Positions 33,964 through 44,885 of a DNA stretch of 64,000 nucleotides are shown here, piece by piece. This DNA is from Hypanus sabinus (Eukaryota), in contig NC_082712.1 of assembly GCF_030144855.1 (NCBI RefSeq), positions 137,764,001 through 137,828,000 on the forward strand, in the 5' to 3' direction. Made by a program: the position numbers and the translations under genes. The stretch's first letter is position 1. Each line of letters begins with the position of its first letter. The notes under the pieces were generated by a model, which saw only the letters and a list, made by a program, of their open reading frames with translations, searched no databases and had not been told where the DNA came from.

Positions 33964-34105
33964 ATGGTTCCCGTCAAGCACATTCACAATCAACACCCAA
34001 CCACCTTTTTCGCCAGGGTTAGTTGTTCACTCTCCATCCTGTGGCACTGTGGGCTGATTCTGCTGACACAAGTCTTTCTTGGACTGTTGATTAAGCTCCA
34101 TGCAG
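33964..34105 (+). CDS. PPP1R15-like exon 1 (hydrophobic N-terminus)
   Basis: gacATGG Kozak context; MVPVKHIHNQHPTTFFARVSCSLSILWHCGLILLTQVFLGLLIKLHA; strong donor CAG|gtaag; phase 1 fits the 35674 acceptor. Confidence 0.7.
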
Positions 34106-37100
34106 GTAAGCGGAACCCCTGAAGAGCAGGGGACGCGGGAATAAAAAAAGTTTGTCTCTGTCGAATGAGTTTGTAGGGAATTCTAAACCAAGACCCTTGG
34201 TGCGCAGAACGTTATAATTGATGGGGAGTGTTTTTCGTGATCTCTCACGTTTCAGTCGCGTGTTGTGTGTCTGTGTTTGACATTTACTGGTTGAGATCAC
34301 AGGAAAAGCATTGGCACCTATGGTAAACCTTGGCCATTCGTCTTTCTGAACGGCTCCATTCGGGTAAACGCTTTGGTAATCTGAGCGAGCTTTATTAAAG
34401 CAAGTGCTTGTTATGAAGTCACAAACACGAGGAAGTCTGCAGATGCTGGAAATCCAAAGCAAAACACAAACACACAACGCTGGAGGAACTCGGCAGTCTC
34501 TATAGAAAAAAAGAGTAAACGATCGACGTTTCTGGCTGAGACTCTTCACCAGGACTGGAAAGAAGAGAAGCCAGAGTGGGAGAAAGGGGAGGAAGAAGTG
34601 CAAGGTGATAGCTGATGGATGAAACCGGGAAGGTGGGGGGGGGGGTGAAGTAAAGAGCTGAGAAGTTGATGTTGAAAGAGATAAAGGCTTGTGGAAGGGG
34701 GAATCTGATAGGAAAGGATAGAGGACCATGGGAGAAAGGGAGATGAGGTGAGAGGGGAAGCAGGAATGAGGAAAGGTGAAGGACGGGTGGGGATGACCAG
34801 AATTTCAAAAAATCAATGTTCATGCCATCAGGTTGGAGGCGAGTTAGAGAAAATATTGCCATACATTGTTTCTTTCTTAGTATAACAGCCATGTCTGAGT
34901 TAAATAGTGTTGCTTGTAGCTCTTGTGGATTTCATGCCTTAGATTTTATGAAATAATTGGATTGTGATGAATTTTTAAAGGTAGATCTATGTTGGGATTT
35001 ATGCATAAATATGTAACACCCCAATTTTACTGAATGTAAATTGTAACTGTGACAGTGAGGTAGTTCTGTCTTCAATTCTAACTTGGGATTACTGTTACTT
35101 CTGCTCACTAGTTCTCACTAAATTTGCTTGACAGCAAGATGATGCTTTTTAGGGACATTGGCAGGAAGGGTATTGCAAGAAAGGGGAGGGAGTTTTTCTT
35201 TTTAACCATTGAGTTATAATAATATCAGGTTAGGTCTTGAAACAAGCTTGATGGCTGGTGCCATACTGACTGTCCAGCTTCGTACGTACAACACACACAA
35301 AATTCTGGTTGCTCTGGATTTCTAGCATCTGTCAAATCTCTTGTGTTTATCACTTAATGAGCATTCATTTGCAGATCTGAAGGATTGGAAAATATAGGTG
35401 TATACAATGACCATTTGATGTATTTAAGGAATCATGAAGGAGCTGGGGAGATGGGGTTGCGTGAATGTGCATTTGATTCTTATTGGACCAAGACTTCAGT
35501 TGAATTCTGATGGTACACCACATCCTCTGTCTTTGAGAAACGTGAAACTGAAGGGATCTGGGGTGGCCTGTCTGTTTTCAGCCTAATCACATATATTGAT
35601 AAGTTATTAATACTTGGCATGCTTGCAATTATGCCATCGTAGCCAATTTCATCTTGGATTTGATATTTTGCAGTTCTTCAGCTGTCCGTATCATCACATC
35701 TCAAGCCTATAGACAAGGGGCCACCAAGCAGTGAACAAGTGGTTGAAGTCAAAAAATGCGACGAAAGATTACTGAACAGGTTTGGAAGAGCAGAAAGAGC
35801 ATTTGGTATCAATGATGACAGTAGCCTGCAGTGCAGATTCATAAAGACTGCCAAAGGAATTAATTCTCAATTGACCTTAAATGAATGTAATTTAACTGAC
35901 CACAAAATAATCTCCATGCTTCCATTTAAATCAGAAAAAAATGCTCAGCCCAGTACTGAGGAGGACTATTGTCAACCTTATCTGAATAATAAGATCAACC
36001 AAGAGTTCTTCAGAGATGATGCTAACTGTACGACTGATGGCAAATGTGTGGTTGTCAGGTACCCTGTCAATCAAAGTGCATTTACAAAAATGATTATGAG
36101 AGAATGGAAGATTAAAGAGGATGATCAAGAAGCTTGCAGTTCGACTGATGATGAAGAATGGGATGACTCTGAAGAATCATCCACTCAGTGCGATAGTCAT
36201 GAATCACTTAGTGATGAGGAACAGAATGAAATCCTTTGGAAATCTTTCTTTACAACAGACATCTACAATCCATGGAATTTTTCTGCACAACTTACTAGTT
36301 CTTCCACAAGAATAGTCACTGAAGATTTAAAGGAACAGTGTTTAGAAAAGAATGTGAAGAGGAATGCCAGCACAGCTAAAGTAAATGTATCATTTGCACA
36401 GAAACCAATTTTACCACAGAGACATTTCCAACACTTTTGCAAACTTGGTGCTAGGGAAAGTGTCAAATTCCATGTGTGGAGAAAGTCATCGAAATGCACT
36501 AAACTTGAAAAAGGAGACAAAGTGATGGGTAAACCAACCTGTAAAAAGGTATGTCCATATCAAATATTTATTCTTTCTTTCATCTTTGGAATTGTTTTGT
36601 TTTCTATAAAAATATCATAATGCACAGTGAAAATGTTGAACCTTCCTAGGAATTTAGGCAATGTTTGCAGAGACAGAAGCAGTTAATATTTCAGTTCACC
36701 AACTGTTCAATCTTTCCATGTTTTAATTTATTTCTGACATTTTCAACCTGACTTCTAAAAATTAGGTAATATCATCCACAACCGTCATGTCTAGAATGCT
36801 AACAAAGCAAAATTATCTGTTTTGGAATAAGTTATCCATTTGGTTTATTTTTTGCATTTTCTCATTTCACAAGGCTTCAGTTGTTTTAATTGAAATGCCA
36901 ATGACTGGTGTGTAATCCACTGAAATGCTTCTGTTTAAGGAGAAAGGGAAAGCAAGTCTGATTAGCTTCATATCAGTGGAATTCTTGTACCACTTAAGGA
37001 GAATCACAGCAGAAAATGGTGATAGGAGGTGTAGGTAGGGAACAGGGAGAAAGTGGAAGGGGTGGAGAGTGTTGTCGTTGGATTGTGTTTTCTGCTTCAT

Positions 37101-44200: not shown

Positions 44201-44885
44201 GCAACGCGTATGCTTATGGTATGGGTACTTACATAGTGACTGGGCGAGCAGGCCTGATCTTTATCCATCCTTACCCATGTGCCTGCTATGCAAATCAGCT
44301 TGCTCTGGTGTCATTTTAATTTCCAAGATCTGTTTGAGTTAGAACTGGAAGGAAGGGTATGGGAGAAGAAACTTTAAGCATAGTTTGAGGTTTTCTGAAA
44401 TGTTCAAATATCTTCAGCAATAAGCTGCTGTTGCAAGATCAATGGAATAGTTCAACAAATGAGTTTTATTAAGTGAAATTATTAAGGAATAAGAGTCTAG
44501 TACATGTCTTTAATTGTGATAAAGTACAAAACAGACTTGAAGGGTTGAATATCCCTATCCATGTTCCAACACTGCCTGCAGACCAACGTTGCAATTTCTT
44601 TGTAAGCCAAAAGCATCAGTTACTTTAAAGTTTTAATGTTTTGATTATTCTCTCTTCCAGCTGAGATTTTCTCCTGTTGTTGAAGTTCACACAATGGTGG
44701 CATGGTCCTTTGCTTTACGTGAAGCTCGGAAGGGCCATTGGATACAGGCAGCTTATGACAGAGCAAGTTTCCTGGACAGGGTGCGGAACACAGAAATGGC
44801 AATTGGTTATTGTCTCCAGAAGGATCACAGACTGAAAATCTGGGAAAAAATTCACAGTCATAATTCAAAGAATTATGTACAGTAG
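33964..44885 (+). CDS. PPP1R15-family protein (GADD34/CReP-like eIF2alpha phosphatase regulatory subunit), ~413 aa, three coding exons
   Basis: join(33964..34105,35674..36548,44661..44885) = 1242 nt with compatible phases (1, 0) and GT-AG introns. Hydrophobic N-terminus, acidic PEST tract, LWKSFFTTDIYNPWNF motif, C-terminal KK|LRFSPVVEVH..W..RKGHW...DRASFLDRV...IGYCL...HR domain. Confidence 0.88.
34423..34850 (-). mobile_element. Penelope-like element 3' fragment in PPP1R15-like intron 1
   Basis: Reverse complement of the [10 protein letters not shown] terminus, pyrimidine tract and cagcatctgcagac tail. Confidence 0.8.
35674..36548 (+). CDS. PPP1R15-like exon 2
   Basis: ttttgcag| 875-nt open frame with DDEEWDDSEESS...NEILWKSFFTTDIYNPWNFSA; ends PTCKK|gtatgt. 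Confidence 0.9.
38166..38203. repeat. (TA)19 microsatellite
   Basis: Perfect TA run inside the YIG codons of the Penelope-like element. Confidence 0.95.
38727..38761 (+). ncRNA. Minimal hammerhead ribozyme-like motif in the Penelope tail
   Basis: AGTC-CTGACGA-A-GGGT(CTCG)GCCC-GAAACGTC-AAC: core intact, helix I weakened by a G>A change. Confidence 0.6.
38991..41887 (-). mobile_element. Full-length hAT (Buster/Charlie-type) DNA transposon, 2897 bp, in PPP1R15-like intron 2
   Basis: 8-bp TSD GTTTAGAC (38983-38990, 41888-41895) with central TA; 16-bp imperfect TIRs CAGGGGTCAGCAACCT / AGGTTGCCGACCCCCA; subterminal GGGAGCCGCA repeats. Confidence 0.95.
39461..41396 (-). pseudogene. hAT transposase (~644 aa once corrected), single +1 frameshift
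   Basis: BED finger (CLIC...H....H), catalytic DES/TDG(A)/CEQVFS, HCILH. ORFs 40458-41438 and 39461-40633 join if one base is removed from the C5 run at 40627-40631. Confidence 0.92.
42723..42885 (-). mobile_element. Penelope-tail short repeat with partial fold-back
   Basis: acacgaggaaatctgcagatgctgg...gtcgacgtttcgggccgagaccc...; same family as 47178-47407. Confidence 0.7.
43650..44085 (+). mobile_element. Penelope-like element 3' fragment
   Basis: EKQHIIFHL..DGMNINFS, pyrimidine tract and tail. Confidence 0.7.
44661..44885 (+). CDS. PPP1R15-like exon 3 (PP1/eIF2alpha-binding domain)
   Basis: tctcttccag| LRFSPVVEVHTMVAWSFALREARKGHWIQAAYDRASFLDRVRNTEMAIGYCLQKDHRLKIWEKIHSHNSKNYVQ*. Confidence 0.92.
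   Translation: MRFSPVVEVHTMVAWSFALREARKGHWIQAAYDRASFLDRVRNTEMAIGYCLQKDHRLKIWEKIHSHNSKNYVQ

What the first reader, a model, noticed from the sequence alone, without database searches (positions are those of the whole stretch)
33964..44885. Candidate third PPP1R15 (GADD34/CReP) ohnologue at the PIK3C2A-RPS13 locus
Seen: an intact, spliceable ~413-aa gene with PPP1R15 architecture (hydrophobic N-terminus, acidic PEST tract, DxYNPxNF motif, phase-0 intron just before the PP1-docking motif, RxGxW..DR..F..R domain), co-oriented directly downstream of PIK3C2A and RPS13. Known: human PPP1R15B lies between PIK3C2B and PLEKHA6, PPP1R15A lies by PLEKHA4/NUCB1, and the paralogous block NUCB2-PIK3C2A-RPS13-PLEKHA7 has no PPP1R15 gene. 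Inference: this is neither A nor B but a retained whole-genome-duplication copy ('PPP1R15C'), which would give this lineage an extra arm for terminating the integrated stress response.
Basis: partly seen in the sequence, partly recalled or inferred. Interest (0 to 1): 0.9.

Follow-up and report, generated by a model that had tools for sequence, protein, structure and literature searches.

The report
Fish-type PPP1R15 gene beside RPS13
This is a real, intact stingray gene for a protein-phosphatase-1 targeting subunit that switches off the cellular stress response, but it is the same gene that sharks, rays and ray-finned fishes all carry next to RPS13 (usually labelled ppp1r15b), not an extra copy special to this lineage.

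Summary
The three exons (33964-34105, 35674-36548, 44661-44885, + strand) splice into a 413-aa protein identical to NCBI's "uncharacterized protein LOC132397249" of Hypanus sabinus. The last exon is a PPP1R15 PP1/eIF2alpha-binding core. The last exons of PIK3C2A and RPS13 lie upstream, co-oriented.

The same gene, with the same intron phases, follows RPS13 in sawfish, sevengill shark, elephant shark, bowfin, sterlet and a mormyrid. In elephant shark and the mormyrid a PLEKHA7-like gene follows it. One well-supported tree clade (97/93) holds these genes together with the ray-finned "ppp1r15b".

By position it is therefore not the tetrapod PPP1R15B, which lies between PIK3C2B and PLEKHA6. But it is old and widespread. 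The Plekha7-Ppp1r15b block in cartilaginous and ray-finned fishes was published in 2022.

Only two gene types were seen in cartilaginous fishes: this one and a NUCB1-adjacent PPP1R15A-type gene. A published table lists no PPP1R15B for gar in the PLEKHA6-PIK3C2B region. An "extra arm" (three genes in the stingray) is unsupported.

Open questions: whether fish "ppp1r15b" is a separate ohnologue ("15C") retained reciprocally with tetrapod 15B, and whether a third locus exists in the stingray. I could not fetch tetrapod 15B sequences.

The parts
33964..34105 (+). Coding exon 1 (47 codons + 1 nt): start codon and hydrophobic N-terminal helix; ends in a phase-1 GT donor
   Evidence: The same phase-1 intron at the homologous A|V position is present in Pristis and in the teleost Paramormyrops.
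35674..36548 (+). Coding exon 2 (875 nt): poorly conserved middle region, acidic Ser/Asp/Glu tract, LWKSFFTTDIYNPWNF (aa 235-250), LPQRHFQHFC (aa 294-303); ends ...KK before a phase-0 GT donor
36549..44660 (+). Intron 2 (8.1 kb), enlarged by a hAT-derived FAM200/GTF2IRD2-like element on the minus strand (ORFs 39461-40633 and 40458-41438)
44661..44885 (+). Coding exon 3 (74 codons + stop): LRF of the KKLRF PP1-docking motif plus the conserved PPP1R15 core (VVEVH, W, RKGHW, DRASF..R, AIGYCL)
24712..28950 (+). RPS13 coding span, the immediate upstream neighbour, co-oriented
47..175 (+). Penultimate coding exon of PIK3C2A (C2 domain)
   Evidence: E 1e-20 to mouse/human PI3KC2alpha C2
1499..1678 (+). 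Last coding exon of PIK3C2A (end of the C2 domain)
   Evidence: E 6e-26 to PI3KC2alpha C2

Best explanation
The gene is the stingray orthologue of an ancient jawed-vertebrate PPP1R15 gene that lies PIK3C2A -> RPS13 -> PPP1R15 -> PLEKHA7. This is the gene annotated 'ppp1r15b' or 'PPP1R15B-like' in cartilaginous and ray-finned fishes.

Inferred from homology only: it encodes a membrane-tethered regulatory subunit of protein phosphatase 1. The N-terminal hydrophobic helix would anchor it to the ER membrane. KKLRF plus VVEVH would dock the PP1 catalytic subunit. The following roughly 55-residue core, together with G-actin, would cradle phosphorylated eIF2alpha so that PP1 removes the Ser51 phosphate and ends the integrated stress response.

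The stingray most likely has two such genes: this one and a NUCB1-adjacent PPP1R15A-type gene.

By chromosomal position this gene is the copy in the 11p15-type paralogon, whereas tetrapod and coelacanth PPP1R15B is the copy in the 1q32-type paralogon. The two are therefore more likely whole-genome-duplication sisters kept reciprocally in different lineages than true orthologues. I put that sub-claim at about 0.55-0.6.
For: Gene model and identity.

Family membership.

Conserved neighbourhood: RPS13 lies directly upstream and co-oriented in Pristis, Heptranchias, Callorhinchus, which also has a WW+PH PLEKHA7-like gene downstream, Amia, Acipenser, with PIK3C2 upstream, and Paramormyrops, with PIK3C2 upstream and a PLEKHA7-like gene downstream. 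Megalobrama has a PIK3C2A-type C2 (79-84% identical to the window's) -> gene -> PLEKHA-like.

Gene structure and motifs: the same two intron positions and phases occur in stingray, sawfish and mormyrid. The LPxRxFxHxC motif is found only in this group (64).

Tree: in a full-length ML tree one clade (97/93*) holds the chondrichthyan genes (100/99*) as sister to lungfish plus ray-finned 'ppp1r15b' (90/91), mirroring the species tree. All 15A-type sequences fall outside it.

Selection: dN/dS between Hypanus and Pristis is 0.42 overall and 0.30 in the core.

Second chondrichthyan gene: it is NUCB1-adjacent in Rhinoraja and Chiloscyllium.

Literature: PMC8983885 lists the Plekha7-Ppp1r15b, Plekha6-Ppp1r15b and Plekha4-Ppp1r15a blocks, the first only in Chondrichthyes and Actinopterygii. 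PMC4015844 Table S3 lists no PPP1R15B for gar, although PLEKHA6 and PIK3C2B are both on LG3; in coelacanth it places PPP1R15B between them.

Distance from tetrapod 15B: no clade member has a CReP_N hit. The human CReP core scores 65.7 bits with this clade's profile against 68.4 with a non-mammalian 15A profile, whereas GADD34 clearly prefers the 15A profile (79.8 vs 67.3).
Against: No tetrapod or coelacanth PPP1R15B sequence could be brought into the tree, so orthology versus ohnology with 15B rests on synteny and a crude profile comparison.

Absence of a PIK3C2B-linked gene in the stingray was not tested directly. A tetrapod-like, divergent core would have fallen below the 150 hits listed.

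The lungfish member (P0048) could be either a retained copy of this gene or the lungfish 15B; its neighbours were out of reach.

No expression or biochemical data are available.

The Hypanus core carries a Ser where 11 of 12 clade members (and human 15A, 15B and DP71L) have Arg (DRxRF). Elasmobranchs also replace GPWEE by G(H/Q)W(I/M/V)Q. Either change could alter activity.
Confidence: 0.7

Rival explanations
1. One reading: the stingray keeps three PPP1R15 genes (15A, a PIK3C2B-linked 15B, and this '15C'), giving it an additional way to end the stress response.
For: The locus is truly the PIK3C2A-RPS13 paralogon. NCBI leaves the gene 'uncharacterized' in Hypanus, Chiloscyllium and Hemiscyllium, and calls it '15B-like' in Pristis. 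A tetrapod-like 15B core is so divergent that it could have been missed (one search lists only the best 150 of 493 hits).
Against: In every cartilaginous fish sampled only two types turned up: this gene and the NUCB1-linked one. In Callorhinchus, Heptranchias, Heterodontus, Narcine and Mobula NCBI gives this very gene the name PPP1R15B, which suggests there is no better candidate. The published table for gar lists no PPP1R15B in the PLEKHA6-PIK3C2B region.
Confidence: 0.15
2. The gene is the true orthologue of tetrapod PPP1R15B/CReP, and one lineage simply moved it between the two paralogous regions. The fish name ppp1r15b would then be correct and there would be no third ohnologue.
For: No species has been shown to hold both a PLEKHA7-linked and a PLEKHA6-linked copy. 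The clade's internal topology follows the species tree and includes a sarcopterygian (lungfish) member. Osteichthyan members carry two or three LWxSF..DPYNPxNF repeats; from memory, human CReP also has two.
Against: The move would have to land in exactly the equivalent slot, co-oriented between PIK3C2B and PLEKHA6, mirroring PIK3C2A-(RPS13)-gene-PLEKHA7. Inheritance from the pre-duplication locus explains that without any move. No clade member has a CReP_N hit. The CReP core shows no preference for this clade's profile.
Confidence: 0.3
3. The two chondrichthyan genes are products of a cartilaginous-fish-specific duplication, not of the ancient whole-genome duplications.
For: An AU test of all 15 chondrichthyan sequences held as one clade is not formally rejected (p 0.067, delta lnL 14.1).
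Against: The free tree places them apart, with 97/93 support for this gene's clade including ray-finned fishes. The two genes sit in different paralogons, each with its own bony-fish or tetrapod counterpart.
Confidence: 0.03
4. The gene is a decaying or non-functional copy.
For: Hypanus alone has Ser in the otherwise conserved DRxRF. The docking motif is KLRF rather than K[VI]xF.
Against: The ORF is intact and all splice sites are canonical. The gene has been kept in the same place in both cartilaginous and ray-finned fishes, so since before those lineages split. dN/dS is 0.30-0.42. KKLRF is shared by rays and several sharks.
Confidence: 0.02

Closest known systems
Ray-finned fish 'ppp1r15b' (e.g. 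Amia, Acipenser, Paramormyrops, Megalobrama, Lepisosteus W5M566)
   Same: Same chromosomal slot (PIK3C2A-RPS13-gene-PLEKHA7), same three coding exons with the same intron phases, same N-terminal hydrophobic helix, the LPxRxFxHxC motif, the same core, and one tree clade.
   Different: The stingray protein is shorter (413 aa vs about 480-650) and has one LWxSF..DPYNPxNF unit instead of one to three. Elasmobranchs have KKLRF and G(H/Q)W(I/M/V)Q where bony fishes have KKV[RST]F and GPWEE.
Tetrapod/coelacanth PPP1R15B (CReP)
   Same: Same family, same C-terminal core (4v0u E 3e-7; TE.AIGYCL..HR tail), and the equivalent position downstream of a PIK3C2 gene and upstream of a PLEKHA gene in a paralogous region.
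   Different: Different paralogon (PIK3C2B/PLEKHA6 rather than PIK3C2A/RPS13/PLEKHA7). No CReP_N domain hit. The fish gene keeps the VxVHxMxxWxFA segment, which is not matched in the solved human CReP core: alignments to 4v0u start only at the RKGPWEE segment.
PPP1R15A (GADD34)
   Same: Same family. The full length of the core aligns (7nzm, residues 1-65). There is a phase-0 intron before the RVxF motif (also in the Rhinoraja 15A-type gene) and an LWxSF..DPYNPxNF unit in non-mammalian 15A.
   Different: Cartilaginous fishes have a separate 15A-type gene next to NUCB1. This gene falls outside the 15A-type sequences in the tree, and the 15A-type genes lack LPxRxFxHxC.
Viral core-only homologues (ASFV DP71L; by knowledge also HSV ICP34.5)
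   Same: Share the roughly 70-residue PP1/eIF2alpha core (9nb9 DP71L, E 0.09 with exon 3 and 1e-8 with the clade profile).
   Different: The viral proteins lack the N-terminal membrane helix and the long middle region.

Membership tests
PPP1R15 family (PP1 regulatory subunit 15) | C-terminal PP1c_bdg core above Pfam's gathering score | tested here: met
   PF10488 scores 45.8 bits against a cut-off of 26.1 on P0001. Exon 3 alone scores 36.4 bits. PDB hits are to the PPP1R15B and PPP1R15A cores.
PPP1R15 family (PP1 regulatory subunit 15) | RVxF-type PP1 docking motif followed by VxVH and the RxGxW...DRxRF..R[IV] signature | tested here: met
   KKLRF-SPVVEVH-...-RKGHW-...-DRASF-LDRV. There are two deviations: Leu in the V/I position (shared by rays and several sharks) and Ser for the second Arg of DRxRF (Hypanus only).
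PPP1R15 family (PP1 regulatory subunit 15) | Binds PP1 and G-actin and promotes eIF2alpha-P dephosphorylation | not testable with these tools
   This needs pull-down, dephosphorylation or reporter assays.
PPP1R15 family (PP1 regulatory subunit 15) | Hydrophobic N-terminal membrane-association segment | tested here: met
   The maximum 19-residue Kyte-Doolittle mean is 2.14, at residues 31-49. Membrane binding itself was not tested.
RPS13/PLEKHA7-linked PPP1R15 orthogroup (fish 'ppp1r15b') | Position directly downstream of RPS13 (and PIK3C2A), co-oriented, with PLEKHA7 next | tested here: met
   Window. Other species. PLEKHA7 itself lies beyond the window.
RPS13/PLEKHA7-linked PPP1R15 orthogroup (fish 'ppp1r15b') | Shared intron positions and phases, the LPxRxFxHxC motif, and monophyly | tested here: met
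   Intron 1 is phase 1 at A|V and intron 2 is phase 0 before [LV]RF in Hypanus, Pristis and Paramormyrops. The motif occurs only in this group. The clade has 97/93* support.
Tetrapod PPP1R15B (CReP) orthogroup | Position between PIK3C2B and PLEKHA6 | tested here: not met
   The upstream PIK3C2 C2 domain matches PI3KC2alpha at orthologue level, and RPS13 intervenes.
Tetrapod PPP1R15B (CReP) orthogroup | CReP_N (PF10472) N-terminal domain | tested here: not met
   There is no hit at E<=1 in P0001 or in seven other clade members. None is recorded for the 79 teleost proteins.
Tetrapod PPP1R15B (CReP) orthogroup | Groups with tetrapod 15B in a tree | tested here: inconclusive
   No tetrapod 15B sequence could be fetched. 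As a proxy, the human CReP core scores 65.7 bits with this clade's profile and 68.4 with a non-mammalian 15A profile.
PPP1R15A (GADD34) orthogroup | Position beside NUCB1/PLEKHA4 and grouping with 15A sequences | tested here: not met
   A different chondrichthyan gene holds the NUCB1-adjacent position. The window's gene lies outside all 15A-type groups.

The most novel reading that the evidence does not exclude
The gene that fish biologists and databases call ppp1r15b (probably including the zebrafish one, by extension from a cyprinid) may not be the orthologue of mammalian PPP1R15B/CReP. It may be a third 2R ohnologue ('PPP1R15C') that cartilaginous and ray-finned fishes kept while losing 15B, and that coelacanth and tetrapods lost while keeping 15B. 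Lungfish (LOC122811115) may hold all three. If the PLEKHA tree (Plekha4 with Plekha7; PMC8983885) reflects the history of the paralogons, this gene would even be the duplication sister of GADD34 rather than of CReP.
Probability: 0.5. Interest if true: 0.55.

Novelty: already known. Interest (0 to 1): 0.33.

Why it matters
The practical point concerns naming and model transfer, not a new mechanism. If the fish gene is a reciprocal-loss paralogue of CReP, then fish 'ppp1r15b' knock-outs and expression data are not straightforward models of human PPP1R15B, whose mutations cause microcephaly, short stature and diabetes (from my own knowledge). The constitutive-versus-inducible split of the two mammalian subunits may also have been set up independently in fishes. 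For the stingray itself the gene is an ordinary, conserved part of the stress-response machinery.

Tried and rejected
Searches that did not reach tetrapod 15B:
- Word-indexed protein searches restricted to the core found only close relatives or teleost 'ppp1r15b' (with the stingray core, with a Denticeps core). The decisive tree could therefore not be built.
- The exhaustive HMMER search lists only 150 of 493 hits and carries no names. Thirty representatives were named through cluster look-ups.
- The protein-atlas search gave only cluster labels.

Locus look-ups with no result:
- Lungfish P0048 and the Heterodontus 15A-type gene showed no neighbours within 10 kb.
- tblastx of the PLEKHA7 first exons of Callorhinchus, Paramormyrops and Megalobrama against 45-64 kb of the window found no PLEKHA7 exon, only RT repeats and non-coding similarity to Pristis.

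Literature and earlier notes:
- The only hit for 'PPP1R15C' is a primer-table typo for PPP1R14C.
- No paper links PPP1R15A/B with 'ohnolog'.
- The supplements of PMC8983885 hold no PPP1R15 text.
- Earlier scan notes for this genome hold nothing on PIK3C2B, PLEKHA6 or NUCB1.

Other:
- The AU test of a chondrichthyan-only duplication was not decisive (p 0.067).
- I did not type the human CReP or GADD34 letters printed into a tree, and I did not run a structure prediction of the largely disordered protein, because neither would decide the open question.

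
Full report
**What is there.**
- Window positions 33964-34105, 35674-36548 and 44661-44885 (+) join through GT-AG introns into a 1242-nt reading frame. Intron 1 is phase 1; intron 2 is phase 0.
- The 413-aa product is identical to NCBI's "uncharacterized protein LOC132397249 [Hypanus sabinus]" (P0001). The annotated gene span equals the finding's coordinates.
- Pfam PP1c_bdg scores 45.8 bits against a cut-off of 26.1.
- Exon 3 alone matches the solved cores of human PPP1R15B (4v0u, E 3e-7), PPP1R15A (7nzm, E 2e-6) and ASFV DP71L.
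- The hydrophobic N-terminus, the acidic tract, LWKSFFTTDIYNPWNF, KKLRF and the RKGHW..DRASF..R core are all present. There is a single such core in the window.

**Neighbourhood.**
- Positions 47-175 and 1499-1678 (+) encode the end of the PIK3C2A C2 domain, with most residues identical to mouse and human PI3KC2alpha (E 1e-20 and 6e-26).
- RPS13 lies at about 24712-28950 (+) and has three SNORD14 copies in its introns. From memory, human RPS13 also hosts SNORD14 genes.
- PLEKHA7 exons were not found in the remaining 19 kb.
- Intron 2 (8.1 kb) is inflated by a FAM200/GTF2IRD2-like hAT-derived element on the minus strand.

**The gene is not peculiar to this lineage.** The closest proteins are annotated "PPP1R15B", "PPP1R15B-like" or "uncharacterized" in Pristis, Mobula, Narcine, Heterodontus, Heptranchias, Chiloscyllium, Hemiscyllium and Callorhinchus. 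Locus look-ups show the same arrangement widely:

| Species | Arrangement |
|---|---|
| Pristis | RPS13 -> gene |
| Heptranchias | RPS13 -> gene |
| Callorhinchus | RPS13 -> gene -> WW+PH PLEKHA7-like gene |
| Amia | RPS13 -> gene |
| Acipenser | PIK3C2 -> RPS13 -> gene |
| Paramormyrops | PIK3C2 -> RPS13 -> gene -> PLEKHA7-like |
| Megalobrama (cyprinid) | PIK3C2 -> gene -> PLEKHA-like, without RPS13 |

The Megalobrama PIK3C2 C2 domain is 79-84% identical to the window's PIK3C2A, so it is a PIK3C2A-type duplicate region.

Further support for one orthogroup:
- Stingray, sawfish and mormyrid share both intron positions and phases, including the phase-1 intron that splits an A|V pair inside the N-terminal helix.
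- An LPxRxFxHxC motif upstream of the core occurs in cartilaginous, lungfish and ray-finned members and in none of the 15A-type proteins.
- A careful ML tree on 390 columns puts all of them in one clade (97/93*). Chondrichthyans (100/99*) are sister to lungfish plus ray-finned fishes (90/91), which is the species tree.

**The second chondrichthyan gene.** A different PPP1R15 type is present in Rhinoraja, Heterodontus, Mustelus, Chiloscyllium, Hemiscyllium and Callorhinchus. NCBI also labels it "15B-like". It lies next to a NUCB1-like gene in Rhinoraja and Chiloscyllium, which is the PPP1R15A neighbourhood. It falls outside the window gene's clade, among the other 15A-type sequences, whose mutual relationships are unresolved. 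In every cartilaginous fish sampled I saw these two types and no third. A tetrapod-like, divergent 15B core could, however, have fallen below the 150 hits listed.

**Relation to tetrapod PPP1R15B.**
- A 2022 study of Plekha7 evolution lists three parallel blocks: Plekha7-Ppp1r15b, Plekha6-Ppp1r15b and Plekha4-Ppp1r15a. It states that the Plekha7-linked block exists only in Chondrichthyes and Actinopterygii and was lost in coelacanths and tetrapods (PMC8983885).
- Table S3 of a 2014 Kiss-gene synteny study lists no PPP1R15B for gar, although PLEKHA6 and PIK3C2B both lie on LG3. In coelacanth and amniotes it places PPP1R15B between those two genes (PMC4015844).
- The pattern is therefore reciprocal: fishes keep the PLEKHA7-side copy, and coelacanth and tetrapods keep the PLEKHA6-side copy. 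Both copies occupy the same slot, co-oriented, between a PIK3C2 gene and a PLEKHA gene. Inheritance from the pre-duplication locus followed by reciprocal loss explains this more simply than a relocation would.
- In line with that, no clade member has a CReP_N hit.
- The human CReP core scores no better with this clade's profile (65.7 bits) than with a profile of non-mammalian 15A cores (68.4). GADD34 clearly prefers the 15A profile (79.8 vs 67.3).
- This evidence is suggestive, not decisive. I could not obtain tetrapod or coelacanth 15B sequences for a tree, and the neighbours of the lungfish gene were out of reach.

**How it most likely works** (inferred from homology; nothing here was shown experimentally).
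- The N-terminal hydrophobic helix tethers the protein to membranes. The hydrophobic N-terminus of PPP1R15A is described as membrane-associating in bioRxiv 10.1101/2023.12.15.571226.
- KKLRF and VVEVH dock the PP1 catalytic subunit.
- The helical core, with G-actin, positions phospho-eIF2alpha for dephosphorylation, as in the 7nzm and 4v0u complexes.
- The acidic tract followed by LWKSF... is a family-wide element that also occurs in non-mammalian 15A. It may correspond functionally to the eIF2gamma-binding FLKAWVY helix and acidic tail of human PPP1R15A. That is speculation.
- Purifying selection is moderate: dN/dS between Hypanus and Pristis is 0.42 overall and 0.30 in the core.
- Two peculiarities deserve a bench test. 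Elasmobranchs replace GPWEE by G(H/Q)W(I/M/V)Q. Hypanus alone has Ser where the Arg of DRxRF is otherwise kept.
- Whether the gene is constitutive or stress-induced is unknown. An upstream ATG at 33712, in the context GACGTTATGG, is shared with Pristis inside a 280-nt block of 77.5% identity. The transcription start is not known.

**Verdict.**
- The reading "neither 15A nor the PIK3C2B-linked 15B, by position" stands.
- The reading [quoted passage not shown] does not.
- The gene is annotated and widespread, and it is the fish "ppp1r15b". Its linkage to Plekha7 in cartilaginous and ray-finned fishes is published.
- What remains possibly new is the explicit claim that fish "ppp1r15b" and mammalian PPP1R15B are reciprocal-loss paralogues. 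I found no paper in the searched library that says so. I rate that claim at about even odds.

Noticed in passing
window 26694-26786, 27803-27898, 28169-28260 (+): Three SNORD14 C/D-box snoRNA copies above Rfam's gathering score sit inside RPS13 introns.
   Followed up: no
window 39461-41438 (-), inside intron 2: A FAM200/GTF2IRD2-like (hAT-transposase-derived) coding region is split into two overlapping ORFs (390 aa and 326 aa). NCBI calls the 390-aa part a gene. It accounts for much of the 8.1-kb intron.
   Followed up: no
window 44772-44774 (codon AGT, aa 375): Hypanus alone has Ser in DRASF. The other 11 members of the orthogroup alignment, and human 15A, 15B and DP71L, have Arg (DRxRF). 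It is a one-base difference from an Arg codon.
   Followed up: partly
window 44727-44750 (aa 362-369) and the elasmobranch orthologues P0002, P0004, P0006, P0154, P0155: All elasmobranch copies have G(H/Q)W(I/M/V)Q where Callorhinchus, bony fishes and the 15A-type genes have GPWEE. Most also have KKLRF instead of KKVRF.
   Followed up: partly
window 33712 (uATG), conserved block about 33614-33886: An upstream ATG in the context GACGTTATGG (a 14-codon uORF) is shared with Pristis (a 5-codon uORF) inside a 280-nt block of 77.5% identity just upstream of the start codon. It is a possible uORF like those of PPP1R15A/B, but the transcription start is unknown.
   Followed up: partly
window 53074-53205, 56755-57056, 58422-58659: Non-coding stretches (stops in all frames) are similar to the region downstream of the Pristis orthologue. 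They may be conserved non-coding elements or untranslated PLEKHA7 exons.
   Followed up: no
window 12461-15742 (+), 22202-23566 (+), 49815-51472 (+), 59854-60480 (-): Several reverse-transcriptase (LINE-like) ORFs are present. Those at about 12-16 kb and 20-24 kb coincide with strong positive GC skew.
   Followed up: no
P0005 (Synchiropus splendidus 'PPP1R15B', 847 aa): This protein carries two PPP1R15 cores (residues 445-508 and 773-836). It is either a tandem duplication fused by annotation or a real two-core protein.
   Followed up: no
L008 (Megalobrama amblycephala): The cyprinid 'ppp1r15b' lies between a PIK3C2A-type gene and a PLEKHA-like gene with no RPS13 called between them. It is probably the teleost duplicate of the region that lost RPS13.
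   Followed up: partly
P0048 (Protopterus annectens LOC122811115, gene span 106 kb): A lungfish member of the RPS13-linked clade carries the LPxWxFxHxC variant of the motif. If it sits beside PLEKHA7, the gene was not lost in all sarcopterygians.
   Followed up: partly
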